A stretch of 64,000 bases of DNA from Macrostomum lignano (taxonomy: Eukaryota). Of the stretch, positions 9,968-56,830 are shown piece by piece. The translations under genes were made by a program, and so were the position numbers. The notes under the pieces are model-generated. The model was not told the DNA's origin. It did no database searches and saw only the letters and a program-made list of their open reading frames with translations. The stretch is from contig NIVC01001913.1 of assembly GCA_002269645.1 (NCBI GenBank), positions 1 through 64,000 of the forward strand. Direction: 5' to 3'. Position 1 is the first letter of the stretch, and every line of letters begins with the position of its first letter.

Positions 9968-12900
9968 AAGAATCTCGTCAGGGGAATTTCGGCAGGTGAA
10001 TCTCGGCAGGGGAATCTCGGCAGGTGAATCTCGGTGGGAGAATCTCGGCAGGTGAATCTCGGCAGGGGAATCTCGGCAGAAGAATCTCGGCAGGAGAATC
10101 TCGGCAGGGGAATCTCGGTGGGAGAATCTCGGTGGGAGAATCTCGGTGGGAGAATCTCGGTGGGAGAATCTCGGCAGGTGAATCTCGGTGGGAGAATCTC
10201 GGTGGGAGAATCTCGGTGGGAGAATCTCGGCAGGGGAATCTCGGTGGGAGAATCTCGGTGGGAGAATCTCGGCAGGGGAATCTCGGTGGGAGAATCTCGG
10301 TGGGAGAATCTCGGTGGGAGAATCTCGGTGGGAGAATCTCGGTGGGAGAATCTCGGCAGGGGAATCTCGGTGGGAGAATCTCGGCAGGGGAATCTCGGTG
10401 GGAGAATCTCGGCAGGGGAATCTCGGTGGGAGAATCTCGGCAGGGGAATCTCGGTGGGAGAATCTCGGTGGGAGAATCTCGGTGGGAGAATCTCGGCAGG
10501 GGAATCTCGGTGGGAGAATCTCGGTGGGAGAATCTCGGTGGGAGAATCTCGGCAGGGGAATCTCGGTGGGAGAATCTCGGCAGGTGAATCTCGGTGGGAG
10601 AATCTCGGTGGGAGAATCTCGGCAGGGGAATCTCGGCAAGGAAATCTCGGCAGGGGAATCTCGGCAGGGGAATCTCGGCAGGTGAATCTCGGTGGGAGAA
10701 TCTCGGTGGGAGAATCTCGGTGGGAGAATCTCGGCAGGGGAATCTCGGTGGGAGAATCTCGGTGGGAGAATCTCGGCAGGGGAATCTCGGTGGGAGAATC
10801 TCGGTGGGAGAATCTCGGTGGGAGAATCTCGGTGGGAGAATCTCGGTGGGAGAATCTCGGCAGGTGAATCTCGGTGGGAGAATCTCGGCAGGGGAATCTC
10901 GGTGGGAGAATCTCGGCAGGGGAATCTCGGTGGGAGAATCTCGGCAGGGGAATCTCGGTGGGAGAATCTCGGTGGGAGAATCTCGGCAGGGGAATCTCGG
11001 TGGGAGAATCTCGGCAAGTGAATCTCGGTGGGAGAATCTCGGTGGGAGAATCTCGGCAGAAGAATCTCGGCAAGGAAATCTCGGCAGGGGAATCTCGGCA
11101 GGGGAATCTCGGCAGGTGAATCTCGGTGGGAGAATCTCGGTGGGAGAATCTCGGCAGGGGAATCTCGGCAGGTGAATCTCGGCAGGGGAATCTCGGTGGG
11201 AGAATCTCGGTGGGAGAATCTCGGCAGGAGAATCTCGGCAAGTGAATCTCGGTGGGAGAATCTCGGTGGGAGAATCTCGGCAGGAGAATCTCGGCAGGTG
11301 AATCTCGGTGGGAGAATCTCGGCAGGTGAATCTCGGTGGGAGAATCTCGGCAAGTGAATCTCGGTGGGAGAATCTCGGCAGGAGAATCTCGGCAGGTGAA
11401 TCTCGGTGGGAGAATCTCGGCAAGTGAATCTCGGTGGGAGAATCTCGGTGGGAGAATCTCGGCAGGTGAATCTCGGCGGGAGAATCTCGGCAGGTGAATC
11501 TCGGTGGGAGAATCTCGGCAGGAGAATCTCGGCAGGTGAATCTCGGTGGGAGAATCTCGGCAGGTGAATCTCGGTGGGAGAATCTCGGTGGGAGAATCTC
11601 GGTGGAAGAATCTCGGTGGGAGAATCTAGGCGGGAGAATCTCGGTGGGAGAATCTCGGTGGGAGAATCTCGGTGGGAGAATCTCGGCAGGGGAATCTCGG
11701 TGGGAGAATCTCGGTGGGAGAATCTCGGCAGGGGAATCTCGGTGGGAGAATCTCGGCAGGGGAATCTCGGTGGGAGAATCTCGGTGGGAGAATCTCGGCA
11801 GGTGAATCTCGGTGGGAGAATCTCGGCAGGTGAATCTCGGTGGGAGAATCTCGGCAGGGGAATCTCGGTGGGAGAATCTCGGTGGGAGAATCTCGGCAGG
11901 TGAATCTCGGTGGGAGAATCTGGGTGGGAGAATCTCGGCAGGGGAATCTCGGTGGGAGAATCTCGGTGGGAGAATCTCGGTGGGAGAATCTCGGTGGGAG
12001 AATCTCGGTGGGAGAATCTCGGTGGGAGAATCTCGGTGGGAGAATCTCGGCAGGGGAATCTCGGTGGGAGAATCTCGGCAGGGGAATCTCGGTGGGAGAA
12101 TCTCGGCAGGGGAATCTCGGTGGGAGAATCTCGGTGGGAGAATCTCGGCAGGGGAATCTCGGTGGGAGAATCTCGGCAGGTGAATCTCGGTGGGAGAATC
12201 TCGGTGGGAGAATCTCGGCAGGGGAATCTCGGTGGGAGAATCTCGGCAGGTGAATCTCGGTGGGAGAATCTCGGTGGGAGAATCTCGGCAGGGGAATCTC
12301 GGCAAGGAAATCTCGGCAGGGGAATCTCGGCAGGGGAATCTCGGCAGGTGAATCTCGGTGGGAGAATCTCGGTGGAGAATCTCGGTGGGAGAATCTCGGC
12401 AGGTGAATCTCGGTGGGAGAATCTCGGTGGGAGAATCTCGGCAGGGGAATCTCGGTGGGAGAATCTCGGTGGGAGAATCTCGGTGGGAGAATCTCGGTGG
12501 GAGAATCTCGGTGGGAGAATCTCGGCAGGTGAATCTCGGTGGGAGAATCTCGGCAGGGGAATCTCGGTGGGAGAATCTCGGCAGGGGAATCTCGGTGGGA
12601 GAATCTCGGCAGGGGAATCTCGGTGGGAGAATCTCGGTGGGAGAATCTCGGCAGGGGAATCTCGGTGGGAGAATCTCGGCAGGTGAATCTCGGTGGGAGA
12701 ATCTCGGTGGGAGAATCTCGGCAGGGGAATCTCAGTGGGAGATTCTCGGCAGGTGAATCTCGGTGGGAGAATCTCGGTGGGAGAATCTCGGCAGGGGAAT
12801 CTCGGCAAGGAAATCTCGGCAGGGGAATCTCGGCAGGGGAATCTCGGCAGGTGAATCTCGGTGGGAGAATCTCGGTGGGAGAATCTCGGCAGGGGAATCT

Positions 12901-15900
12901 CGGCAGGTGAATCTCGGCAGGGGAATCTCGGTGGGAGAATCTCGGTGGGAGAATCTCGGCAGGAGAATCTCGGCAAGTGAATCTCGGTGGGAGAATCTCG
13001 GTGGGAGAATCTCGGCAGGAGAATCTCGGCAGGTGAATCTCGGTGGGAGAATCTCGGCAGGTGAATCTCGGTGGGAGAATCTCGGCAGGGGAATCTCGGT
13101 GGGAGAATCTCGGCAGGAGAATCTCGGCAGGTGAATCTCGGCGGGAGAATCTCGGCAGGGGAATCTCGGCAGGTGAATCTCGGCGGGAGAATCTCGGCAG
13201 GTGAATCTCGGTGGGAGAATCTCGGCAGGTGAATCTCGGTGGGAGAATCTCGGTGGGAGAATCTCGGTGGAAGAATCTCGGCAGGTTAATCTCGGTAGGA
13301 GAATCTCGGTGGGAGAATCTCGGTGGGAGAATCTCGGTGGGAGAATCTCGGTGGGAGAATCTCGGTGGGAGAATCTCGGCGGGAGAATCTCGGCGGGAGA
13401 ATCTCGGTGGGAGAATCTCGGTGGGAGAATCTAGGCGGGAGAATCTCGGTGGGAGAATCTCGGTGGGAGAATCTCGGTGGGAGAATCTCGGCAGGGGAAT
13501 CTCGGTGGGAGAATCTCGGTGGGAGAATCTCGGCAGGGGAATCTCGGTGGGAGAATCTCGGTGGGAGAATCTCGGTGGGAGAATCTCGGTGGGAGAATCT
13601 CGGTGGGAGAATCTCGGCAGGTGAATCTCGGTGGGAGAATCTCGGCAGGGGAATCTCGGTGGGAGAATCTCGGCAGGGGAATCTCGGTGGGAGAATCTCG
13701 GCAGGGGAATCTCGGTGGGAGAATCTCGGTGGGAGAATCTCGGCAGGGGAATCTCGGTGGGAGAATCTCGGCAGGTGAATCTCGGTGGGAGAATCTCGGT
13801 GGGAGAATCTCGGCAGGGGAATCTCAGTGGGAGATTCTCGGCAGGTGAATCTCGGTGGGAGAATCTCGGTGGGAGAATCTCGGCAGGGGAATCTCGGCAA
13901 GGAAATCTCGGCAGGGGAATCTCGGCAGGGGAATCTCGGCAGGTGAATCTCGGTGGGAGAATCTCGGTGGGAGAATCTCGGCAGGGGAATCTCGGCAGGT
14001 GAATCTCGGCAGGGGAATCTCGGTGGGAGAATCTCGGTGGGAGAATCTCGGCAGGAGAATCTCGGCAAGTGAATCTCGGTGGGAGAATCTCGGTGGGAGA
14101 ATCTCGGCAGGAGAATCTCGGCAGGTGAATCTCGGTGGGAGAATCTCGGCAGGTGAATCTCGGTGGGAGAATCTCGGCAGGGGAATCTCGGTGGGAGAAT
14201 CTCGGCAGGAGAATCTCGGCAGGTGAATCTCGGCGGGAGAATCTCGGCAGGGGAATCTCGGCAGGTGAATCTCGGCGGGAGAATCTCGGCAGGTGAATCT
14301 CGGTGGGAGAATCTCGGCAGGTGAATCTCGGTGGGAGAATCTCGGTGGGAGAATCTCGGTGGAAGAATCTCGGCAGGTTAATCTCGGTAGGAGAATCTCG
14401 GTGGGAGAATCTCGGTGGGAGAATCTCGGTGGGAGAATCTCGGTGGGAGAATCTCGGTGGGAGAATCTCGGCGGGAGAATCTCGGCGGGAGAATCTCGGT
14501 GGGAGAATCTCGGTGGGAGAATCTCGGCAGGTGAATCTCGGTGGGAGAATCTCGGTGGGAGAATCTCGGTGGGAGAATCTCGGCAGGGGAATCTCGGTGG
14601 GAGAATCTCGGTGGGAGAATCTCGGCAGGGGAATCTCGGTGGGAGAATCTCGGTGGGAGAATCTCGGTGGGAGAATCTCGGTGGGAGAATCTCGGTGGGA
14701 GAATCTCGGCAGGTGAATCTCGGTGGGAGAATCTCGGCAGGGGAATCTCGGTGGGAGAATCTCGGCAGGGGAATCTCGGTGGGAGAATCTCGGCAGGGGA
14801 ATCTCGGTGGGAGAATCTCGGTGGGAGAATCTCGGCAGGGGAATCTCGGTGGGAGAATCTCGGCAGGTGAATCTCGGTGGGAGAATCTCGGTGGGAGAAT
14901 CTCGGCAGGGGAATCTCAGTGGGAGATTCTCGGCAGGTGAATCTCGGTGGGAGAATCTCGGTGGGAGAATCTCGGCAGGGGAATCTCGGCAAGGAAATCT
15001 CGGCAGGGGAATCTCGGCAGGGGAATCTCGGCAGGTGAATCTCGGTGGGAGAATCTCGGTGGGAGAATCTCGGCAGGGGAATCTCGGCAGGTGAATCTCG
15101 GCAGGGGAATCTCGGTGGGAGAATCTCGGTGGGAGAATCTCGGCAGGAGAATCTCGGCAAGTGAATCTCGGTGGGAGAATCTCGGTGGGAGAATCTCGGC
15201 AGGAGAATCTCGGCAGGTGAATCTCGGTGGGAGAATCTCGGCAGGTGAATCTCGGTGGGAGAATCTCGGCAGGGGAATCTCGGTGGGAGAATCTCGGCAG
15301 GAGAATCTCGGCAGGTGAATCTCGGCGGGAGAATCTCGGCAGGTGAATCTCGGTGGGAGAATCTCGGCAGGAGAATCTCGGCAGGTGAATCTCGGTGGGA
15401 GAATCTCGGCAGGTGAATCTCGGTGGGAGAATCTCGGTGGGAGAATCTCGGTGGAAGAATCTCGGCAGGTTAATCTCGGTAGGAGAATCTCGGTGGGAGA
15501 ATCTCGGTGGGAGAATCTCGGTGGGAGAATCTCGGTGGGAGAATCTCGGTGGGAGAATCTCGGCGGGAGAATCTCGGCAGGAGAATCTCGGTGGGAGAAT
15601 CTCGGTGGGAGAATCTAGGCGGGAGAATCTCGGTGGGAGAATCTCGGTGGGAGAATCTCGGTGGGAGAATCTCGGCAGGGGAATCTCGGTGGGAGAATCT
15701 CGGTGGGAGAATCTCGGCAGGGGAATCTCGGTGGAGAATCTCGGTGGGAGAATCTCGGCAGGGGAATCTCGGTGGGAGAATCTCGGCAGGTGAATCTCGG
15801 CAGGGGAATCTCGGTGGGAGAATCTCGGCAGGGGAATCTCGGCAAGGAAATCTCGGCAGGGGAATCTCGGCAGGGGAATCTCGGCAGGTGAATCTCGGTG

Positions 15901-17078
15901 GGAGAATCTCGGTGGGAGAATCTCGGCAGGTGAATCTCGGCAGGTGAATCTCGGCAGGGGAATCTCGGTGGGAGAATCTCGGTGGGAGAATCTCGGTGGG
16001 AGAATCTCGGCAAGTGAATCTCGGTGGGAGAATCTCGGTGGGAGAATCTCGGCGGGAGAATCTCGGTGGGAGAATCTCGGTGGGAGAATCTAGGCGGGAG
16101 AATCTCGGTGGGAGAATCTCGGTGGGAGAATCTCGGTGGGAGAATCTCGGCAGGGGAATCTCGGTGGGAGAATCTCGGTGGGAGAATCTCGGTAGGGGAA
16201 TCTCGGTGGAGAATCTCGGTGGGAGAATCTCGGCAGGGGAATCTCGGTGGGAGAATCTCGGCAGGTGAATCTCGGTGGGAGAATCTCGGTGGGAGAATCT
16301 CGGCAGGGGAATCTCGGCAAGGAAATCTCGGCAGGGGAATCTCGGCAGGGGAATCTCGGCAGGTGAATCTCGGTGGGAGAATCTCGGTGGGAGAATCTCG
16401 GCAGGGGAATCTCGGCAGGTGAATCTCGGCAGGGGAATCTCGGTGGGAGAATCTCGGTGGGAGAATCTCGGTGGGAGAATCTCGGCAAGTGAATCTCGGT
16501 GGGAGAATCTCGGTGGGAGAATCTCGGCAGGAGAATATCGGTGGGAGAATCTCGGCAGGTGAATCTCGGTGGGAGAATCTCGGTGGGAGAATCTCGGTGG
16601 GAGAATCTCGGTGGGAGAATCTCGGTGGGAGAATCTCGGTGGGAGAATCTCGGTGGGAGAATCTCGGTGGGAGAATCTCGGCAGGGGAATGTCGGCAAGG
16701 GAATCTCGGCAGGTGAATCTCGGTGGGAGAATCTCGGTGGGAGAATCTCGGTGGGAGAATCTCGGTGGGAGAATCTCGGTGGGAGAATCTCGGTGGGAGA
16801 ATCTCGGTGGGAGAATCTCGGTGGGAGAATCTCGGTGGGAGAATCTCGGCAGGTGAATCTCGGTGGGAGAATCTCGGCAGGGGAATCTCGGTGGGAGAAT
16901 CTCGGCAGGGGAATCTCGGTGGGAGAATCTCGGCAGGGGAATCTCGGTGGGAGAATCTCGGTGGGAGAATCTCGGTGGGAGAATCTCGGTGGGAGAATCT
17001 CGGTGGGAGAATCTCGGTGGGAGAATCTCGGTGGGAGAATCTCGGTGGGAGAATCTCGGTGGGAGAATCTCGGCAGTG
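9968..17078. repeat. 7.1-kb 14-bp satellite (GAATCTCGG-TGGGA/CAGGG/CAGGT) with 1092-bp higher-order repeat
   Basis: About 500 monomers. Rare variants recur exactly 1092 bp apart (CTCAGTGGGAGATT at 12731/13823/14915; GCAGGTTAAT at 13281/14373/15465). Confidence 0.97.
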
Positions 17079-18567: not shown

Positions 18568-19531
<964 letters not shown>

Positions 19532-19930: not shown

Positions 19931-21055
19931 TGTGAGGGAAGCGCTCTGTCTCGATGGGAACGAGAGAACTGTAGAGGATTAGCGGCAGTTGATTGAAATT
20001 TTTTTGGAGAAAATTCCTGGGACTAAAGCAGTAAACAAAACGGCAGGTCTACGCTCGTAATTGCTACTTGATGCTTGACGAATCGAATGAGATATTGTAT
20101 GCTTGTTGAATCCATCGAATTACTATATATGGATACAGTTTTATTCAGATGAAATTCGAGAAATCTAAATAAAATCGAAGGTTATTTTTAGCTATTTGCC
20201 AATTCAACTGAACTGAGTTATTCAAAAGCGACAACGGATCATTTTGACGGCCATATGTCATGCTCAAAGTTGACCAGCCAATGAGAAATAAGCAGGGGAC
20301 GGAATTTAAATGTACGTACACCGCTAGGCACTGTACAGTGAGGTGATGGCTAAATAAGAAGCAGCCAGCCAATAAGAAGCCAATAAGAAGCCAATACAAG
20401 GGGAAAGAGTCTTGATGTACACAGAGGCATTGTACAGTTTACAGTGCTGGTTTTTTAGTGGCCAAGCAGCCAATAAGAAGCAAGCAGAGGGTACGACAAT
20501 TTACTCCTGCCAACAAATCTTACATTTCCCAGAGTCTCTCAAAATGACAGGTGTTGCAGCCTCAACAATCAATCAATAATCATGACAGTTTCTGCTTCTA
20601 ATGCACATAATTTAGAGTGTAAAACAATTAATTTTCAATAGTCCTTGACCTTATAAAACTTATTCTATAATAGCTACAATGATTTTATGCATTTTGCAAT
20701 ATGCATTTCGTAGCAAACCTTCGACATTGCATGATCACAAAAAACGCATTAAATCTGTGATTAAGATCAAATTAGCCTAGACGGCACGCAGTAAATTCGC
20801 CATATCAACCTTGTCATTGAGATGTTTTTGCCCCGCTTTCATCTTAACAGCGGGCGAAAACAGCAAGGCTTACCGAGGCTGCTGCGTTAGAGAGAACGGG
20901 ATGTTTGAGAACTGCATTTCTCTGTGGTTTCGAAGCTCTCTCAGTTGCCTGTTCGAGCCATCTGTTCGTCTTTTGTAACCTTTCCTTCTTAATCAAAGAG
21001 TCTTTCAGAGTGCACTCTCGATTGTCAGTGCATCATGTTGTTTAGTTAGCCATTT

Positions 21056-24179
<3,124 letters not shown>

Positions 24180-24939: not shown

Positions 24940-25287
24940 ATCTAACCTAAACTCTAACCTTCGCCCTAGCTCATGTACCCTAACTCTATAGCCCCGACCT
25001 AAACCCTAACCAAAACCCTAACCTAAACAGTAAAACCCTAACCTAAACCCTAAAACCCTAACCTAAACCCTAAAACCTTAACCTAAACCCTAAAACCCTA
25101 ACCTAAACCCTAAAACCCTAACCTAAACCCTGTAACCCTAACCTAAAAAGTAAAACCCTAACCTAAACCCTAAAACCCTAACCTAAACCCTATAACCCTA
25201 ACCTAAACCCTATAACCCTAACCTAAACCCTATAACCCTAACCTAAACCCTATAACCCTAACCTAAACCCTATAACCCTAACCTAAG
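24940..25287. repeat. Telomere-like 20-bp minisatellite (AACCTAAACCCTAAAACCCT)
   Basis: Units contain CCCTAA and CCCTAAA variants; the array lies in intron 3 of the receptor gene. Confidence 0.88.
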
Positions 25288-31297: not shown

Positions 31298-32109
31298 GCG
31301 GCATTTGCTAAGAAAGTCATCTAGTTGCCACCCACGCAGGTTAATTAAATGCACAACCAGCCGATCAGATTGTCGTCATTTCATCCCGCTGGCGCCATAA
31401 ATCATTGTGCCAGCCCTTCCCCCATAACCGAATTGACAGGTGAAGCTCTGGCACTCCCCAGACTGAGTGTCGGTGAATTTCTGTCAAGGTATACGTTTTG
31501 TGAGCGCATGAGAGACAGAGATGGACGTTGAGCTTCGTTTGGGAGCAACAGACAGTCTTGCGTGGGCTTTAGAGACGTCAGTTTCCGGGGGTTGGGGTGT
31601 AGCGGGACCAGCTCACAGGAGAACAACCGATAGGCAATCAAGATTAAGTGGGAGCGGAGCAGGGCCACACTGCGGTGGCGCCACAGCGTCCTTACAATTC
31701 TTTTCTCCCTCGCACACCCCACCCACCGGGGCTGATTGCAGGCTCCGTGCAAACTTTTCCTTTGCTCAATTATTCATCCCCAAGCAAGCACGAACAAGCT
31801 TGGAGCAAAAAATTAATGGTGGGCACCGCCGCGGGTCGTGTGGAGGGTGGGGGGGGGGGCGGCGACAGACGGAGGTGAATTTTTTTTGACAAGGAGGCTG
31901 CGACTCCGAGGGCTGCAGGAATGCATTTACCGAACAAGGGGCTACTATTGTTGACTTAACAAGACAGATGTATCATGCAGCTGAAATACAGTAGTTGTGA
32001 GGCTGAGCAATACTGCATTGTTACAGCAATTCAGTGTGCGCCTTTCAGACTTTGGGACTGGGTAAAGTCTTGCGGACTTATGCATGGCTCCATGCACTCT
32101 TAGTCATAG

Positions 32110-33925
32110 ATTAGCAATCCATTCTAATCCTAATATTTCAATGACTATAAGTTAGCAATTTATTCTAATCCTCATATTTATAGACTATAGATTAGCAATC
32201 CATCTTAATCCTCATATTTATAGACTATAGATTAGCAATCCATTTTAATCCTCATATTCATAGACTATAGATTAGCAATCCATTTTAATCCTCATATTCA
32301 TAGACTATACATTAGCAATCCATTCTAATCCTTATATTCACAGACTATAGATTAGCAATCCATTCTAATCCTTATCTATAGACTATAGATTAGCAATCCA
32401 TTCTAATCCTTATATTCATAGACTATAGATTAGCAATCCATTCTAATCCTTATCTATAGACTATAGATTAGCAATCCATTCTAATCCTTATATTCATAGA
32501 CTATAGATTAGCAATCCATTCTAATCCTTATATTCATAGACTATAGATTAGCAGTCCATTCTAATCCTTATATTCATAGACTATAGATTAGCAGTCCATT
32601 CTAATCCTTATATTCATAGACTATAGATTAGCAGTCCATTCTAATCCTTATATTCATAGACTATAGATTAGCAATCCATTCTAATCCTTATATTCACAGA
32701 CTATAGATTAGCAGTCCATTCTAATCCTTATATTCATAGACTATAGATTAGCTATCCATTTTAATCCTCATATTCATAGACTATACATTAGCAATCCATT
32801 CTAATCCTTATATTCACAGACTATAGATTAGCAATCCATTCTAATCCTCATATTCACAGACTATAGATTAGCAATCCATTCTAATCCTTATATTCATAGA
32901 CTATAGATTAGCAGTCCATTCTAATCCTTATATTCATAGACTATAGATTAGCAGTCCATTCTAATCCTTATATTCATAGACTATAGATTAGCAATCCATT
33001 CTAATCCTCATATTCACAGACTATAGATTAGCAATCCATTCTAATCCTTATATTCATAGACTATAGATTAGCAATCCATTCTAATCCTTATATTCATAGA
33101 CTATAGATTAGCAGTCCATTCTAATCCTTATATTCATAGACTATAGATTAGCAGTCCATTCTAATCCTTATATTCATAGACTATAGATTAGCAATCCATT
33201 CTAATCCTTATATTCATAGACTATAGATTAGCAGTCCATTCTAATCCTTATATTCATAGACTATAGATTAGCAATCCATTCTAATCCTTATATTCATAGA
33301 CTATACATTAGCAATCCATTCTAATCCTTATATTCATAGACTATAGATTAGCAGTCCATTCTAATCCTTATATTCATAGACTATAGATTAGCAGTCCATT
33401 CTAATCCTTATATTCATAGACTATAGATTAGCAGTCCATTCTAATCCTTATATTCATAGACTATAGATTAGCAGTCCATTCTAATCCTTATATTCATAGA
33501 CTATAGATTAGCAGTCCATTCTAATCCTTATATTCATAGACTATAGATTAGCAATCCATTCTAATCCTTATATTCATAGACTATAGATTAGCAGTCCATT
33601 CTAATCCTTATATTCATAGACTATAGATTAGCAATCCATTCTAATCCTTATATTCATAGACTATACATTAGCAATCCATTCTAATCCTTATATTCATAGA
33701 CTATAGATTAGCAGTCCATTCTAATCCTTATATTCATAGACTATAGATTAGCAGTCCATTCTAATCCTTATATTCATAGACTATACATTAGCAATCCATT
33801 CTAATCCTTATATTCATAGACTATAGATTAGCAGTCCATTCTAATCCTTATATTCATAGACTATAGATTAGCAGTCCATTCTAATCCTTATATTCATAGA
33901 CTATAGATTAGCAGTCCATTCTATA
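32110..33925. repeat. 40-bp minisatellite (AGATTAGCAATCCATTCTAATCCTTATATTCATAGACTAT)
   Basis: About 45 tandem units with no spacers. Confidence 0.96.
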
Positions 33926-35171: not shown

Positions 35172-36178
35172 AATAGATTAGCAATCCATTCTATTCCTAA
35201 CCCACATGCCATAGATTAGCAATCCATTCTATTCCTAACCCACATGCCATAGATTAGCAATCCATTCTATTCCTAACCCACACGCCATAGATTAGCAATC
35301 CATTCTATTCCTAACCCACATGCCATAGATTAGCAATCCATTCCATTCCTAACCCACACGCCATAGATTAGCAATCCATTCTATTCCTAACCCACATGCC
35401 ATAAATTAGCAATCCATTCTATTCCTAACCCACACGCCATAGATTAGCAATCCATTCTATTCCTAACCCACACGCCATAGATTAGCAATCCATTCTATTC
35501 CTAACCCACATGCCATAGATTAGCAATCCATTCTATTCCTAACCTACATGCCATAGATTAGCAATCCATTCTTTTCCTAACCCACATGCCACAGATTAGC
35601 AATCCATTCTATTCCTAACCCACATGCCATAGATTAGCAATCCATTCTATTCCTAACCCACACGCCATAGATTAGCAATCCATTCTATTCCTAACCCACA
35701 CGCCATAGATTAGCAATCCATTCTATTCCTAACCCACATGCCATAGATTAGCAATCCATTCTATTCCTAACCCACATGCCATAGATTAGCAATCCATTCT
35801 ATTCCTAACCCACATGCCATAGATTAGCAATCCATTCTATTCCTAACCCACATGCCATAGATTAGCAATCCATTCTATTCCTAACCCACATGCCATAGAT
35901 TAGCAATCCATTCTATTCCTAACCCACATGCCATAGATTAGCAATCCATTCTATTCCTAACCCACATGCCATAGATTAGCAATCCATTCCATTCCTAACC
36001 CACACGCCATAGATTAGCAATCCATTATATTCCTAACCCACACGCCATAGATTAGCAATCCATTATATTCCTAACCCACACGCCATAGATTAGCAATCCA
36101 TTCTATTCCGAACCCACACGCCATAGATTAGCAATCCATTATATTCCTAACCCACACGTCATAGATTAGCAATCCATC
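35172..36178. repeat. 38-bp minisatellite (AATCCATTCTATTCCTAACCCACATGCCATAGATTAGC)
   Basis: About 26 units; shares the core ATAGATTAGCAATCCATTCTA.TCCT with the 40-mer array. Confidence 0.95.
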
Positions 36179-46835: not shown

Positions 46836-47155
46836 TCACCGCTTCTTAGCATGGATTCGCCGCTCCAGCTCTCTCAGCTGAGCAGCGTTGGTCTCAGCTA
46901 TCATCGTGAGCTCATGCACCGAATTCACCAAGTCTTCCACCCTCTGTTTTGCCAGCTCCTCCTTGGCGCTGTCTCTGCGCGACTGTCGCTGATATTCAGC
47001 AATAATGGTGGCCGCGGCGATCAGGTAGATGACAGCCTCGCCAAGAATGGTGGCCCCGGTGTCCACAGCCTGTTCCGGGTTGAGCTTAGTAACAGCCTTT
47101 GGTTTGCCAAGACCCAGTGCCTGCATCTTGAGCCGGGTGTCGTACCAGTGGTGCA
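46836..47155 (-). CDS. OPA3: OPA3-like mitochondrial protein, exon 2
   Basis: Acceptor catcctcag|TG (phase 1). Reads LHHWYDTRLKMQALGLGKPKAVTKLNPEQAVDTGATILGEAVIYLIAAATIIAEYQRQSRRDSAKEE followed by a coiled coil and stop. Confidence 0.9.
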
Positions 47156-48318
47156 CTGAGGATGCAAAAGTTAAAATTGGAATGCTTGTAGATATTCAGA
47201 TATGAAATTTCTAGTTTGTCAAAAATCAAACCCCATGTAGAAAGCCAGTTGTTGAAGAACAAGAATTAAGACATGTGTACATTAAATACATTAAATAAAT
47301 AAGAAAATTAATATACTATTAAATGATATTTTAAATATTTAACAATATATATACTTTTAAGAAGTTTAAGCTTCATATAACTTTTTTTTGAAAAAAACCA
47401 ATAAAGAAAATGCCTCCAATAAAGTAAAAAGTGGCTTAATTTTTTTAGCATATATATCTTTTTAGTATGTTTGTGCAAGTATACCAAGATTCTAGGATTT
47501 TATTCCTTAGTATAGATCAAAAGAAAAGGGCAAACAACAATAAAACTATCATTGTTTGCCCCTTTTCCAAAATTTGCCAAAATTTGCTTGGTCTCTTTGC
47601 AATCTTTGCCCAAGGAAAGATAGCTATCCCCCCTTTAGCTATGGTTGTTAAGCTATGACATTGACAGTTCCTTTGTTTCCTTAGTTCTTTGGTTGATATT
47701 CACTGTTAATATTTACTGTGTATTTTATTTTGGTTATTTCAATATTTTGGTAATTTGTGTATTTAATATGTATTAGGTTGTATTTTTATGTATACTGATA
47801 ATGGTTAGCAATACTTTGTTTTATTGGGTTGGCAATACCTTATTTAACATTTTTAATTATATGGCTTTGGAGGGACAGTTCTTGGGAGCTTGGCTATTAG
47901 TCTTACTGCAAACAAGTTCATTATTACATGCATTATTAATGAATGTTATTTGCTAGATCTAGAATTGCACCTAATCTAAGTATTATCCTATAAGATCATA
48001 ATCTCCAAAGCCATCCCAACCTGATTTGTTACTTTGTTGGCTTATTAGTTACATGTGATTATTATACTACTACCATCCATTTGAGAAAAAATATAAGTCA
48101 TAAGATCAAATATTGGACAGTGGCCCAGTTTGTCATTGATCATAATCAAGGTTCTATGTGTTCATCACTAATTATTATGTGTTTTTATGTGTTCTTTTTA
48201 CTCTCGAATATTCATCACAATCACTAATAATCACTAGGCCTAATTAGATTTCTATTAACAGGCATACTGCATATATTGCTTAGTCAAATTCAAAGCAGAT
48301 TTTAAAGGTCATACTTAC

Positions 48319-48457
48319 ACTGTGCAGGTGGTATACAAATGTAATTCCGAAAGAATGAGCTCGATTTTGCTCGTTCCTTCAAGAAATTGGCTATTGGTTT
48401 TCCAAGCTGTCGAACAGCAAGGTACAGAAGTTTAGCAACAGGAAATTCCGCAACCAT
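48319..48457 (-). CDS. OPA3: OPA3-like mitochondrial protein, exon 1
   Basis: [46 protein letters not shown] matches the OPA3 N-terminus. Donor CAGT|GTAAGT (phase 1). The spliced CDS is 152 aa. Confidence 0.9.
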
Positions 48458-49465: not shown

Positions 49466-49473
49466 TATAAATA
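49466..49473 (+). promoter_or_regulatory. Candidate TATA box (TATAAATA) of the neuropeptide precursor gene
   Basis: Canonical TATAAATA about 135 bp upstream of the ATG at 49602. Confidence 0.45.
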
Positions 49474-49601
49474 CCTCCTAGCACCCAGCAGTACAGAAGT
49501 TGCGCCAAGAAACTATAGTTGCACTCGACTAACCTGCACTCGAAAAGATTTTTTAGTCTCTAGGATCGATAATTCTCTACTAGCCAGCATCCAGCAGCAC
49601 A

Positions 49602-50001
49602 ATGCGATTTGCAATCATCAACGTGTCCATGGCTTTGCTAGCTATGACGCTGCTGCTCAGCACCAGCTGCTCCACAATGCGCATCTCTGAGCCATCCGAG
49701 CTGCTGCGATCTTTGTCGACCCGTCCGCGCCCTGCGTCGTTCCTGCTGGCTGGCGATCCGGCCGGATTCTTCGGCAACGCCTACAGCTGGAGTCCCAACT
49801 ACGTTCAGCGGCGCTCGGACAATAAGAACAAAATGTACAAAGCTCTGCTGGCCTCGCTGAAGCCCAACACGTACAACCCAAGCGATTTCAGGTGAGAATT
49901 TTATTGCTTAAATTCAATCATTTTCTAGTGTCGCTAAATCTATATATAGACACTCAATTCCAACCAAACACAATTTTAAACATTTCAGAGTTGGCCGCTG
50001 A
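49602..50001 (+). CDS. Small secreted amidated neuropeptide precursor (exons 49602-49891 and 49989-50001; 100 aa)
   Basis: Hydrophobic signal peptide (MRFAIINVSMALLAMTLLLSTSCST), dibasic RR, then SDNKNKMYKALLASLKPNTYNPSDFR|VGR*. The 97-nt intron TTCAG|GTGAG...catttcag|A supplies the G-R amidation/cleavage signal. Confidence 0.7.
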
Positions 50002-50152
50002 GCAAAAGGCCGAAAAAGACCAATTGACTCGCTGGACAGCTGGAATGACATTAAAACTGTAACAAGAAACAAGCGGCTAATGAGCATACGAGCTAGAACT
50101 AGATTGTGATTATTAACGCAGGCAAATTTGTACGAACATTAACCTATATAAA

Positions 50153-50158
50153 AATAAA
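50153..50158 (+). terminator. Candidate polyadenylation signal AATAAA for the neuropeptide gene
   Basis: AATAAA about 150 bp after the stop codon. Confidence 0.4.
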
Positions 50159-50324
50159 GATCATTTAAATCTATCGATTTAAACTACTATACACAAATAA
50201 ACTGCTGGAAGTTGTGTTTTATAAATTTATTGATCTGCAATGCGATGCATAAAAGCATCCGGCCCTCGGGTCATTTAAAACTTCACAATAGAAATCCGGC
50301 CCGCTTAAGATTTGTTTCTCTTCT

Positions 50325-50348
50325 CAGCTCTCTTCTCTCTCTTCTCGC

Positions 50349-50435
<87 letters not shown>

Positions 50436-50830
50436 CTCTCTCTCTCTCCCTCTTTCACTACCTCTCTCACTACCCCTCTCTCTCTCTCCAGCTCCCCTCT
50501 CATCTTTTTTCATCTCTCATTTCATCTCTGATCCTCTTACAGCCCTGACGAAGAATTTACCTAATTCGAAATATCGGCAATTCAACTAAATTGACCTTCT
50601 TCAGTCCTTTCTACCGTGTCGGTGCCTGGGATTGGAGGTGCCCTCCTCTCTCTCTCCCTCTCTCGCTCTCTCTCTCTCTCTCTTTCTCTTTCTACCTCTC
50701 TCTCTCTACCTCTCTTTCCAGCTCCCCTCTCATCTTCTTTCCTCTAACCTCTCCTTTCAACTCTCATTTCATCTCTGATCTTCTCTTTCCTCTTCTCTCT
50801 CCTCTATTCCCTCTTTTCTCTCTCCTCTAT
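50325..50830. repeat. (CT)n-rich tracts with a local ~60-bp duplication
   Basis: Read directly; CCAGCTCCCCTCTCATCTT...TCTCATTTCATCTCTGATC occurs twice. Confidence 0.85.
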
Positions 50831-55425: not shown

Positions 55426-55881
55426 TCAAACATCGTCATCGGAGTCGTGCTCCTCCAGTGCGGCCTTGGCATAGTTACTGGCCTCGGTCCATTGTTCCCC
55501 AGTAACTATCACGTGACGACCGGCCGTCTCGGCCGAGGTCAAGGACAAATCCAATTCGAAATATTTATCCTTGACCTCGTCGTGGCACGAGTAAATAATT
55601 TTAGCGGCCTCTTTCACCCCGTTGGCGGCAGACAACTCGGCTAGTTTTAGTTTCTCAATCTCTGTGCGAGCGTTCTGCTTGGCCTTGCCAATAGCGTAGC
55701 CATGGTAACTATAGTACACGCCAGACGGTTCGACTCCGTACAGCTGGGGCCGGCCGTTCTCGAAGGCGGCCAGCAGGACGCCGCAGCCGAACGGTCTAAC
55801 GGCGCTGTACATGGTGTAGGCGTGCATCAGATTGCTGACCCGGCTGGCCAGCTCCGATAGCGGCATCGGCTCACCGTGCGA
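55426..55881 (-). CDS. PSMA3: Proteasome subunit alpha type-3 (alpha7), exon 2
   Basis: Acceptor attcgcag|TCG (phase 0). Reads SHGEPMPLSELASRVSNLMHAYTMYSAVRPFGCGVLL...GKAKQNARTEIEKL...HDEVKDKYFELDLS...acidic tail*. Confidence 0.95.
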   Translation of the reverse strand, partial: SHGEPMPLSELASRVSNLMHAYTMYSAVRPFGCGVLLAAFENGRPQLYGVEPSGVYYSYHGYAIGKAKQNARTEIEKLKLAELSAANGVKEAAKIIYSCHDEVKDKYFELDLSLTSAETAGRHVIVTGEQWTEASNYAKAALEEHDSDDDV

Positions 55882-56440
55882 CTGCGAATAACACATTGTT
55901 GTTTATTGGTGTGGTGTTGGTAAAATAATATCTGCTTCAACTACTTCTTAGTAGTAGTTAATAGCCTAGCAAATGATACATAGATTTTTACTTAATATTC
56001 TTACTGACTAAGACGACATTTTAAGATTTATTGGGGGGTAGCAATTCCTTTGGAAATCTTAACGAGCCCCCGGATCTCCCAAGAATTTCCTAAGGATTCC
56101 CCGGATCTCCCGAAGATTTCCCGGATCACCTGAGGATTCTGTCAGATCTCTTGCGGATTTCCCGGGTCTCCTGAGGATTCTCCCGGATCTCCTGTGGATT
56201 CCCCGGATCTCCCTCCGGATCTCCTTCCTCCGGATCTTTTTAAAAGTCCTTTTTTTCTCAAAAGATTCCCCAGCTTTCAAGAAATTTCCCCAGATTTCCT
56301 AAGTGCTAACAGACTACCCGAAGATTCCTTGTATTCCTGGAGGATTTCTAGCAGGAATATTTCCAGAGATCTCCCTTATGATTACTGGTTAATTCTAGGT
56401 ATTCAGCCGGATTCTAAAGCTCCTAAATAACCCGGCTTAC

Positions 56441-56743
56441 CTGTCGATAATCGGCAGCCTCCTCGCGAGCGTGCCTAGCAACGGCCCTGGCGTCGGGCAG
56501 CAGGCCGGAGGCGGCCATGCCGATGTGCCTATCGATGTGGAACACGCGCCGATTGCAATTAGTCTCGTACAGCTTCGACGTGACAATATTTTCAACGGCT
56601 AATACGACACCATCCCGACAGCAGATGCCGACAGCGGTGCCGCTGGATTCAACAGCCTTGTGCGCGTACTCGACCTGGAATAGCTTGCCCTCGGGGCTGT
56701 ACTCTGATACGTCCAAATCGTAACCTGTTCCGATGCTGCTCAT
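56441..56743 (-). CDS. PSMA3: Proteasome subunit alpha type-3 (alpha7), exon 1
   Basis: [10 protein letters not shown]...[22 protein letters not shown] is the diagnostic alpha7 N-terminus. Donor CAG|GTAAG. An acceptor 20 nt upstream of the ATG (56764/56763) implies a 5'UTR intron. The spliced CDS is 252 aa. Confidence 0.95.
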
Positions 56744-56830
56744 TGTTGGATGTGGGCGCGCCGCTGCAAAGGGAAAAGTAGTAGTATGTCAAATAGTAGT
56801 ACGTATCTACCATAGCTTACAGAGGCTTAC

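What the first reader, a model, noticed from the sequence alone, without database searches (positions are those of the whole stretch)
49602..50001. Candidate novel RV-amide neuropeptide with an NPY/NPF-type intron
Seen in the sequence: signal peptide, a ~45-aa pro-region, RR, then a 27-mer SDNKNKMYKALLASLKPNTYNPSDFRV followed by G-R-stop. The amidation signal exists only after splicing; unspliced, the ORF stops at DFR. The intron is phase 2 inside the Arg codon preceding the amidated residue (AG|A). Established knowledge: this is where NPY/NPF genes are interrupted in their RxRF/Y-amide motif. However, the peptide lacks RxRF, lacks the typical Tyr spacing and does not directly follow the signal peptide. 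Inference: a strongly diverged NPY/NPF offshoot or an undescribed family. It also has a TATA box and a poly(A) signal.
Basis: partly seen in the sequence, partly recalled or inferred. Interest (0 to 1): 0.7.

Follow-up and report, generated by a model that had tools for sequence, protein, structure and literature searches.

The report
Orphan flatworm amidated-peptide precursor gene
This is a real, transcribed two-exon gene of the flatworm Macrostomum lignano that looks like the precursor of a secreted 27-residue peptide ending in RV-amide; it has the intron position typical of NPY/NPF hormone genes but no detectable sequence likeness to them or to any other known family.

Summary
Window 49602-49891 plus 49989-50001, joined across a 97-nt GT..AG intron, encode a 100-aa protein. 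It has a signal peptide, a 45-aa pro-region, an RR site, the 27-mer SDNKNKMYKALLASLKPNTYNPSDFRV, then G-R-stop. The intron is phase 2 inside the Arg codon (AG|A).

The window is the start of Macrostomum lignano contig NIVC01001913.1. The same spliced protein is already deposited as hypothetical protein BOX15_Mlig023917g1. That annotation is built only from RNA-seq transcripts, so the splice has indirect RNA support. Two further syntenic copies (g2, g3) are 99% identical.

I confirmed the same phase-2 Arg split in a cestode and a snail NPF gene. Every sequence test for NPY/NPF membership fails: hhalign probability is 0.2%, and an NPF HMM gives -0.9 bits, no better than shuffles. Atypical planarian NPY-11 and NPY-7 score 34 and 25 bits as controls.

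Searches of 5.8 and 1.84 billion proteins found no true homologue. UniRef's "BBE domain" label is not reproducible, and "FRVamide" is absent from the literature library.

Verdict: a plausible lineage-restricted amidated signalling-peptide precursor with no assignable family. NPF ancestry is possible (about 25%). Neural expression, amidation and receptor remain untested.

The parts
49466..49471 (+). TATA box (TATAAA), about 30 nt upstream of where sequence conservation among the three gene copies becomes perfect
   Evidence: It is unchanged in all three copies. Its function is inferred.
49501..49601 (+). Putative 5' UTR. The start point is inferred, and there is no upstream ATG.
   Evidence: 0 differences in 101 columns among the 3 copies. 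No ATG between 49480 and 49601.
49602..49673 (+). Signal peptide, residues 1-24 (MRFAIINVSMALLAMTLLLSTSCS). The cleavage site is approximate.
   Evidence: Hydrophobic core with Kyte-Doolittle values up to 2.4 and small residues at -3/-1. AlphaFold helix over residues 2-24. Heuristic only.
49674..49808 (+). Pro-region, residues 25-69 (TMRISEPSELLRSLSTRPRPASFLLAGDPAGFFGNAYSWSPNYVQ)
   Evidence: It carries one of the two amino-acid differences between copies (T40A); the other, A14V, is in the signal peptide. Its GFFGNAYSWSPNYVQ motif gives only spurious hits to prokaryotic repeat proteins.
49809..49814 (+). Dibasic RR prohormone-convertase site (R70-R71)
   Evidence: Invariant in the 3 copies. 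Cleavage is inferred.
49815..49891 (+). Exon-1 part of the predicted mature peptide: S72 to F96 plus the first two bases (AG) of the Arg97 codon
   Evidence: Two synonymous and no non-synonymous differences among the copies.
49892..49988 (+). Intron: 97 nt, GT..AG, 72% A+T, phase 2 within Arg97 (AG|A)
   Evidence: The same splice is in the deposited transcript-based gene model. The position is equivalent to NPF genes checked.
49989..50001 (+). Terminal coding exon segment: third base of Arg97, Val98 (predicted amidated residue), Gly99 (amide donor), Arg100 (basic residue removed by carboxypeptidase) and the TGA stop
   Evidence: Invariant in the 3 copies. Processing is inferred.
50002..50220 (+). 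Putative 3' UTR with AATAAA at 50153-50158 and 50196-50201 (and ATTAAA at 50050). The end point is inferred from where the copies stop being alike.

Best explanation
A lineage-restricted (orphan) prohormone gene of Macrostomum lignano.

Shown:
- It is transcribed from a TATA-containing promoter and spliced once.
- It encodes a 100-aa pre-pro-peptide.

Inferred steps:
- The signal peptide (about 24 aa) sends the product into the secretory pathway.
- A PC2-type convertase cuts after R70-R71.
- A carboxypeptidase removes the C-terminal Arg100.
- Peptidylglycine alpha-amidating monooxygenase converts Gly99 into the amide of Val98.
- The product is SDNKNKMYKALLASLKPNTYNPSDFRV-NH2, calculated [M+H]+ 3113.62. 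It has an N-terminal amphipathic helix and a proline-containing tail, and carries about +4 net charge.

The amidation signal exists only in the spliced mRNA. I take the peptide to be an extracellular signalling peptide (neuropeptide or peptide hormone) acting through a receptor, most likely a GPCR. I cannot assign it to any described family. The NPY/NPF-type intron is either the last trace of an NPF origin or a coincidence, and the data here cannot decide which.
For: - Gene anatomy and splice.
- An identical spliced protein is already deposited, and the annotation is purely transcript-based.
- Three syntenic copies share a conserved transcription unit within diverged flanks. Substitutions are 4 synonymous to 2 non-synonymous, and neither non-synonymous change lies in the mature peptide, the RR site or G-R.
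- The architecture has precedents among planarian prohormones validated by mass spectrometry and in situ hybridisation, including pro-region plus C-terminal amidated peptide and G-stop endings (PMC2953531). PC2-dependent processing is established in flatworms.
- No homologue in 5.8 billion or 1.84 billion proteins, in PDB or in NCBIfam.
- No sequence affinity to NPF, PDF or BBE profiles.
Against: - There is no direct evidence for secretion, cleavage, amidation, neuronal expression or a receptor.
- No orthologue from another species was available, so conservation of the processing sites is shown only among three 99%-identical copies of one genome. The intron and UTRs are just as conserved, so the selection signal is weak (one-sided binomial p about 0.03 on 6 substitutions, my calculation).
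- Short peptides are poorly represented in protein databases, so 'orphan' may reflect sampling.
- The peptide is cationic and amphipathic, which also fits a non-neuronal secreted peptide.
Confidence: 0.45

Rival explanations
1. A strongly diverged paralogue of the flatworm NPY/NPF superfamily. The ancestral gene structure survives (a phase-2 intron in the Arg codon before the amidated residue, then X-G-basic), but the RPRF/Y motif and the helix signature have been replaced. It might still act on an NPF-type or derived GPCR.
For: - The intron position and phase match NPF genes checked here in a cestode and a snail and those described for vertebrate, planarian and other bilaterian NPY/NPF genes.
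- Flatworms have expanded and divergent NPY families: 11 genes in Schmidtea, including NPY-11 with non-aromatic RPRL-amide, NPY-7 with a 39-aa N-terminal region and G-stop, and NPY-3/4/5 with pro-peptides.
- A 13-nt terminal coding segment is an unusual structure to arise by chance (inference).
Against: - hhalign of the planarian NPY profile against the peptide gives probability 0.24%.
- C-terminus-anchored PSSM: z = 0.55, p = 0.28.
- A 35-sequence NPF HMM gives -0.9 bits, and 57% of shuffles score as well. Leave-one-out controls give NPY-11 34.3, NPY-7 24.5 and NPY-2 40.8 bits.
- There is no RxR motif. Tyr residues are at -8 and -20 rather than -10 and -17.
- No Pfam PF00159 hit is on record.
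- AG|R is a favoured proto-splice site, so independent intron gain inside an AGA codon is possible (established knowledge).
Confidence: 0.25
2. A secreted peptide that is not a neuropeptide, for example an epidermal or gland product, an antimicrobial or defence peptide, or a reproductive-tract peptide. It would be made by the same signal-peptide, convertase and amidation route.
For: - The mature peptide is cationic (5 K/R against 2 D/E, with an amidated C-terminus). Residues KMYKALLASLK form an amphipathic helix with hydrophobic moment up to 0.48, and AlphaFold predicts a helix over residues 65-85.
- It is a lineage-restricted orphan, as is common for defence and reproductive proteins.
- Several planarian prohormones are expressed outside the nervous system.
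Against: - The pro-region is not acidic (net about +1), unlike typical antimicrobial-peptide precursors (sequence, my count).
- There is a single peptide copy with a classical dibasic site plus G-R end, and a Pro-rich flexible C-terminal tail typical of receptor ligands (inference).
- The gene ID was not found in the stored parts of the tables of reproduction-related or in-situ-annotated transcripts. Those files were truncated, so this carries almost no weight.
Confidence: 0.18
3. A young or non-functional transcribed ORF whose prohormone-like features (RR, G-R-stop, intron position) are coincidental.
For: - No homologue anywhere.
- All three copies are so similar (intron 1%, UTRs 0-2% substitutions) that conservation says little.
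- The gene lies next to a very repeat-rich region.
- At exactly 100 aa it only just passes the usual ORF-calling minimum (own knowledge of the TransDecoder default).
Against: - It has a complete, coherent set of signals: TATA box, clean 5'UTR, good splice sites, signal peptide, dibasic site, amidation signal and poly(A) signals.
- All three copies keep the frame and the sites, with a 4:2 synonymous to non-synonymous ratio.
- The transcript level was sufficient for inclusion in the core gene set.
Confidence: 0.1
4. A relic or fragment of a berberine-bridge-enzyme-like FAD oxidase, as UniRef's name 'BBE domain-containing protein' suggests.
For: - The UniRef cluster name.
- By eye there is a loose resemblance of Y..L...K..YNP..FR and DPAGFF to the BBE motif Y.RL..vK..yDP.N.Fr (alignments).
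Against: - phmmer of the protein against PDB at E<=10 hits none of the more than 60 BBE-type chains.
- An HMM built from 7 PDB BBE domains gives 1.9 bits, and 10% of shuffles do as well.
- NCBIfam gives 0 hits. No Pfam hit is on record in this collection.
- There is no FAD-binding domain, and the protein is only 100 aa long.
Confidence: 0.02

Closest known systems
Flatworm NPY/NPF superfamily, especially Schmidtea mediterranea npy-11 (atypical, RPRL-amide) and npy-7 (long N-terminal region, G-stop); prototype Moniezia expansa NPF
   Same: - A single amidated peptide at the C-terminal end of a small precursor.
- A phase-2 intron splitting the Arg codon immediately before the amidated residue.
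- A non-aromatic amidated residue has a precedent in npy-11, a pro-region before the peptide in npy-3/4/5/7, and the lack of a C-flanking peptide in npy-7.
   Different: - There is no RxR motif (DFRV against RPRF/Y/L) and no Y-17/Y-10 signature.
- No profile similarity: -0.9 bits against 24-41 bits for true members.
- The peptide is 27 aa with a Pro-containing 11-residue tail after the helix.
Generic invertebrate amidated neuropeptide prohormones with 'signal peptide, associated peptide, dibasic site, C-terminal amidated peptide, G-K/R-stop' architecture (for example PDF/cerebrin precursors)
   Same: The overall precursor layout and size, about 100 aa, and an aliphatic amidated C-terminus (own knowledge of PDF precursors).
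   Different: No sequence similarity: a PDF/cerebrin HMM gives -0.6 bits and 61% of shuffles do as well.
Arg-aliphatic-amide peptides of Spiralia and arthropods: flatworm NPP-1 I/L-amides (GFVRI-amide, AFVRL-amide), FxRI-amide, and PRX-amides such as CAPA/periviscerokinin (FPRV-amide)
   Same: A C-terminal Arg followed by an aliphatic amide, with a nearby Phe. FxRIamide is listed as a spiralian family in PMC8557429. The rest is own knowledge.
   Different: - Those are short peptides, usually 5-11 aa and often in several copies per precursor.
- The motif register differs: F-x-R-I or F-P-R-V against D-F-R-V.
- No similarity was detectable, and 'FRVamide' is not found in the literature library.

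Membership tests
NPY/NPF superfamily | Phase-2 intron between the 2nd and 3rd base of the Arg codon that precedes the C-terminal amidated residue | tested here: met
   Ours is TTC AG|GTGAGA...TTTCAG|A GTT GGC CGC TGA. Controls read with the same tools are the Sparganum NPF-like gene CG|GT..AG|G TTC GGA AAA AGG and the Bradybaena NPF gene AG|GT..AG|G TTT GGA AAG AGG. The feature is defined in PMC7314547 and PMC2953531.
NPY/NPF superfamily | C-terminal R-x-R-F/Y-amide (flatworms: GRPRF/Y; the most atypical accepted member is RPRL) | tested here: not met
   The peptide ends S-D-F-R-V-amide. Only the penultimate Arg is shared (and the alignment).
NPY/NPF superfamily | Detectable profile similarity to the family (Pfam PF00159 / NPF HMM) | tested here: not met
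   - hhalign probability 0.24%.
- NPF HMM gives -0.9 bits, and 57% of shuffles score at least as well. Leave-one-out controls score 24.5-40.8 bits.
- Anchored PSSM p = 0.28.
- No Pfam hit is on record for the protein, while most NPF hits carry PF00159.
NPY/NPF superfamily | Conserved Tyr (aromatic) residues about 10 and 17 residues from the C-terminus within an amphipathic helix | tested here: not met
   Tyr residues are at -8 and -20. The family pattern is visible in the 25 aligned NPFs.
NPY/NPF superfamily | Peptide of about 29-40 aa directly after the signal peptide, usually followed by a C-flanking peptide | tested here: inconclusive
   Ours is a 27-mer after a 45-aa pro-region with no C-flanking peptide. 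However, planarian NPY-3/4/5/7 also have N-terminal pro-peptides and NPY-7 ends in G-stop.
NPY/NPF superfamily | Activates an NPY/NPF-clade GPCR | not testable with these tools
   This needs receptor expression assays.
Amidated neuropeptide / peptide-hormone prohormone (generic) | N-terminal signal peptide | tested here: met
   Heuristic only: M-R followed by a 17-residue hydrophobic core and S-C-S|T, plus an AlphaFold helix over residues 2-24. SignalP was not available.
Amidated neuropeptide / peptide-hormone prohormone (generic) | Basic convertase site(s) flanking the peptide, and a C-terminal Gly followed by a basic residue or stop | tested here: met
   RR at residues 70-71 and G99-R100-stop. 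All are invariant in the three copies.
Amidated neuropeptide / peptide-hormone prohormone (generic) | Mature peptide more conserved than the pro-region across species | tested here: inconclusive
   Only three 99%-identical in-genome copies were available. Both amino-acid changes lie outside the mature peptide. No orthologue was found.
Amidated neuropeptide / peptide-hormone prohormone (generic) | Expression in neurons or endocrine cells, and detection of the processed amidated peptide | not testable with these tools
   The expression tables that would answer this (PMC7336406 supplements) are truncated in the held copy.
BBE (berberine-bridge-enzyme-like) domain, PF08031 | Significant match to the BBE C-terminal domain, normally following an FAD_binding_4 domain | tested here: not met
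   No BBE chain was hit at E<=10 in PDB. A BBE HMM gives 1.9 bits, and 10% of shuffles score at least as well. NCBIfam gives 0 hits. There is no FAD domain.
PDF / cerebrin | Sequence similarity to the N(S/A)E(L/I)IN...L(P)K... amide core | tested here: not met
   The HMM gives -0.6 bits, and 61% of shuffles score at least as well.

The most novel reading that the evidence does not exclude
The gene is a true descendant of the NPY/NPF lineage that has lost every sequence hallmark, including RxRF/Y, and kept only the diagnostic phase-2 Arg-codon intron and the X-Gly-basic end. It would be an 'RV-amide NPF'. This would show that gene structure can outlast sequence in neuropeptide evolution, and it would widen the ligand repertoire of the expanded flatworm NPY system. 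Alternatively, it is the founding member of a new macrostomorph peptide family.
Probability: 0.25. Interest if true: 0.55.

Novelty: new member of a known kind. Interest (0 to 1): 0.4.

Why it matters
Macrostomum lignano is a transgenic, RNAi-amenable flatworm model. I found no catalogue of its neuropeptides in the searchable literature, and no canonical NPF of this species turned up in the protein search. The annotation's ORF-length cut-off may exclude most small precursors.

A validated new amidated peptide would add a tractable ligand to flatworm peptidergic signalling. That field is of interest for regeneration, reproduction (planarian NPY-8) and anthelmintic targets.

If the NPY-type intron reflects descent, the gene would be an extreme case for using exon-intron structure to trace neuropeptide homology where sequence has been erased. 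If it does not, it is a cautionary example that this 'diagnostic' intron can occur outside the family.

Tried and rejected
- **Second copy or tandem paralogue in the window.** tblastn found none.
- **Homologue searches.** The word-indexed search of 5.8 billion proteins returned only the gene itself. Full HMMER against 1.84 billion representatives returned the gene itself plus five prokaryotic repeat proteins. Their 'GASFTGNTFSWTPSYTQAG' repeats match the pro-region motif GFFGNAYSWSPNYVQ, and I rejected them as spurious multi-repeat score accumulation.
- **NPF membership by sequence.** Rejected.
- **Canonical M. lignano NPFs for comparison.** A planarian NPY profile search found none in the protein collection. 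The M. lignano genome itself is not searchable with these tools.
- **BBE-domain reading of the UniRef name.** Rejected.
- **PDF/cerebrin.** Rejected.
- **Planarian prohormone list.** Searches for RV-amide, FRVG and DFR motifs found only an unrelated GAEFFLRRV-amide.
- **Literature.** 'RVamide' gave one cnidarian paper. 'FRVamide' and variants gave nothing relevant. 'Mlig023917' is not in any main text. McVeigh 2009 and Koziol 2016, the main flatworm neuropeptide catalogues, are not held, so comparison with their npp families rests on memory only.
- **Expression look-up.** The supplements of PMC7336406 and PMC5816591 are truncated in the held copy, so the absence of the ID is uninformative.
- **Rfam and tRNA scans of the window.** Nothing found.
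- **AlphaFold.** The single-sequence model has low confidence (mean pLDDT 62.9), so I did not search for similar folds.

Full report
**1. Observation**

The region reads exactly as the first-stage reader described.
- An ATG at 49602 opens a 97-codon ORF that stops at ...NPSDFR* when unspliced. The stop is the TGA created by AG|GTGA at the 5' splice site.
- Joining 49891 to 49989 across a 97-nt, 72% A+T, GT..AG intron gives a 303-nt reading frame (5'ss CAG|GTGAGA, 3'ss TTTCAG|A).
- The product is MRFAIINVSMALLAMTLLLSTSCSTMRISEPSELLRSLSTRPRPASFLLAGDPAGFFGNAYSWSPNYVQRRSDNKNKMYKALLASLKPNTYNPSDFRVGR*.
- The intron is phase 2 inside the Arg97 codon (AG|A). Val98, Gly99, Arg100 and the stop lie on the 13-nt second coding segment.
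- TATAAA lies at 49466-49471, no upstream ATG occurs in the putative 5'UTR, and AATAAA occurs at 50153 and 50196.

**2. Origin and reality of the gene**

- The protein is 100% identical over its full length to PAA62646.1, 'hypothetical protein BOX15_Mlig023917g1' of the free-living flatworm Macrostomum lignano.
- The encoding record is NIVC01001913.1 of assembly GCA_002269645.1. The gene has the same coordinates there as in the window, so the window is the first 64 kb of that contig.
- The GenBank annotation of this assembly was produced only from RNA-seq-derived transcripts (StringTie/TACO plus a de novo transcriptome) with TransDecoder ORFs (PMC5730564). The 49891>49989 junction therefore has indirect RNA support. 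I could not look at reads directly.
- Two further copies, g2 and g3, each differ by one amino acid (T40A and A14V). They lie on other contigs in the same order: OPA3-like gene, this gene, proteasome alpha-subunit gene. This fits the partly duplicated genome of the sequenced line.
- In a three-way DNA alignment, 49501-50200 is a conserved island, while 34-40% of flank columns differ.
- Exon 1 has six substitutions, four synonymous and two non-synonymous. Neither non-synonymous change touches the mature peptide, the RR site or the G-R end.
- This is compatible with purifying selection but weak. The copies are very young and the intron is equally conserved.

**3. What the product looks like**

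- The N-terminus has a basic residue, a 17-residue hydrophobic core and small residues at -3/-1. AlphaFold puts a helix on residues 2-24.
- A 45-residue pro-region follows, then RR, then a 27-mer, then Gly-Arg-stop. This is the canonical substrate for a prohormone convertase, a carboxypeptidase and the amidating enzyme.
- The predicted product is SDNKNKMYKALLASLKPNTYNPSDFRV-NH2 with [M+H]+ 3113.62.
- It has five basic and two acidic residues and an amphipathic stretch, KMYKALLASLK, with hydrophobic moment 0.48. AlphaFold predicts a helix over residues 65-85.
- The 11-residue tail contains two prolines.
- These processing steps are inferred, not shown.

**4. Comparison with NPY/NPF**

The literature defines a conserved NPY/NPF intron between the second and third base of the Arg codon of the C-terminal RF/RY (PMC7314547). 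[quoted passage not shown]

I checked the feature with the same tools in two annotated genomes:
- Sparganum proliferum NPF-like gene: ...GGA AGA CCA CG|GTAGGA ... TTTAG|G TTC GGA AAA AGG.
- Bradybaena similaris NPF gene: ...GGA AGA CCC AG|GTAAGC ... CTGCAG|G TTT GGA AAG AGG.

The Macrostomum gene is interrupted at the equivalent place. NPY-3, -4, -5 and -7 carry N-terminal pro-peptides, NPY-7 ends in G-stop, and NPY-11 ends in RPRL-amide.

At the sequence level, however, nothing links the peptide to the family.
- hhalign of a nine-member planarian NPY profile against the peptide aligns one column, with probability 0.24%.
- A PSSM of 25 non-redundant NPFs, anchored at the C-terminus and therefore at the intron, scores the peptide at z = 0.55, p = 0.28 against shuffles.
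- A 35-sequence NPF HMM gives -0.9 bits, which 57% of shuffles equal or exceed.
- The most atypical accepted members score far higher in leave-one-out tests: NPY-11 34.3, NPY-7 24.5 and NPY-2 40.8 bits.
- The RxR motif is absent and the Tyr residues are at -8 and -20 instead of -10 and -17.

Membership is therefore supported by one defining feature and contradicted by three.

My rough weighing is as follows.
- About 20% of planarian prohormone genes are npy genes.
- The intron coincidence favours descent by some tens-fold.
- Complete loss of sequence signal disfavours it by a similar factor.

This leaves NPF descent at about one in four. That estimate is inference.

**5. Other identities considered**

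- No true homologue exists in 5.8 billion clustered proteins or 1.84 billion representatives scanned by full HMMER.
- The five extra HMMER hits are prokaryotic Ig-like repeat proteins whose repeated 'G.SF.GN.FSWTP.YTQAG' motif resembles residues 55-69 of the pro-region. I regard them as spurious.
- UniRef names the protein 'BBE domain-containing protein'. I could not reproduce this:
  - No BBE-type chain appears at E<=10 in PDB.
  - An HMM from seven PDB BBE domains scores 1.9 bits, and 10% of shuffles do as well.
  - NCBIfam gives nothing.
- PDF/cerebrin precursors share the layout but not the sequence.
- Arg-aliphatic-amide families (flatworm I/L-amides, FxRI-amide, PRV-amides) share only the last two residues in a different register. 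'FRVamide' does not occur in the literature library.
- The two main flatworm catalogues (McVeigh 2009, Koziol 2016) are not held. A match to one of their npp families cannot be formally excluded.

**6. Most likely mechanism and rivals**

- Best reading (0.45): a lineage-restricted prohormone whose spliced mRNA, and only the spliced form, encodes the amidation signal. It would yield a secreted RV-amide 27-mer acting as a neuropeptide or hormone of unassigned family.
- Rival, diverged NPF paralogue: 0.25.
- Rival, non-neuronal secreted peptide (defence, gland or reproductive), which the cationic amphipathic helix would fit: 0.18.
- Rival, coincidental features in a young, non-functional ORF: 0.10.
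- Rival, BBE relic: 0.02.

The tests that separate them are listed under the decisive next steps:
- junction reads;
- the full positional expression table;
- orthologues in other Macrostomum species;
- the canonical NPF genes of this genome;
- peptidomics at m/z 3113.62;
- in situ hybridisation and RNAi;
- receptor assays.

**7. Novelty and score**

The gene model is already public but unnamed. I found no description of the peptide, and it belongs to a well-known kind of gene, the small amidated-peptide precursor. I class it as a new member of a known kind.

The NPY-type intron in a peptide with no NPF sequence is a real curiosity and makes a testable evolutionary question. Function and expression are unknown, and flatworms have many lineage-specific peptides, so I score interest at 0.4.

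Noticed in passing
window 822-46589: The first 46 kb are almost entirely tandem-repeat arrays. They include a 14-nt unit AGAATCTCGGTGGG repeated about 500 times (9969-17073), (TTAG)n of about 785 copies (21042-24179), (CTAT)241 (18568-19531), related 40- and 38-nt satellites (32106-33923, 35173-36177) and a telomere-like CCCTAA-variant 20-mer (25012-25286). The window begins at base 1 of the contig, so this may be a subtelomeric or pericentromeric contig end.
   Followed up: no
window 50328-50488: A (CT)n microsatellite lies directly 3' of the peptide gene. From about here on, the three genomic copies of the locus no longer align well.
   Followed up: partly
window 46836-48457 (-) and 55426-56761 (-); L002, L003: The flanking called genes are an OPA3-domain protein (152 aa) and a proteasome alpha-type subunit (258 aa). 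The same gene order is found around all three copies of the peptide gene, which indicates duplicated genomic blocks rather than dispersed copies.
   Followed up: partly
window 49764-49808 (residues 55-69 of the precursor): The pro-region motif GFFGNAYSWSPNYVQ resembles the repeat core 'GASFTGNTFSWTPSYTQAG' of long prokaryotic Ig-like repeat proteins. This produced misleadingly good E-values (down to 2e-14) through repeat accumulation.
   Followed up: yes
protein P0001 (window 49602-50001): UniRef labels the protein 'BBE domain-containing protein'. No test here reproduces a BBE match, so the public name is probably a false-positive domain call.
   Followed up: yes
protein P0001; one search hit list: The precursor is exactly 100 aa, the usual TransDecoder minimum ORF length (own knowledge). 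No canonical M. lignano NPF appeared in a profile search that found NPFs of planarians, cestodes, molluscs and arthropods; typical NPF precursors are 67-86 aa. The deposited M. lignano proteome may therefore systematically lack small neuropeptide precursors.
   Followed up: partly
window 49363, 49441 and 50024 (relative to L002/L003): The window copy (g1) lacks 7-bp and 15-bp segments in the promoter region and a 9-bp segment in the 3'UTR that are present in copies g2 and g3. The TATA box and the transcribed 5' region are unchanged.
   Followed up: no
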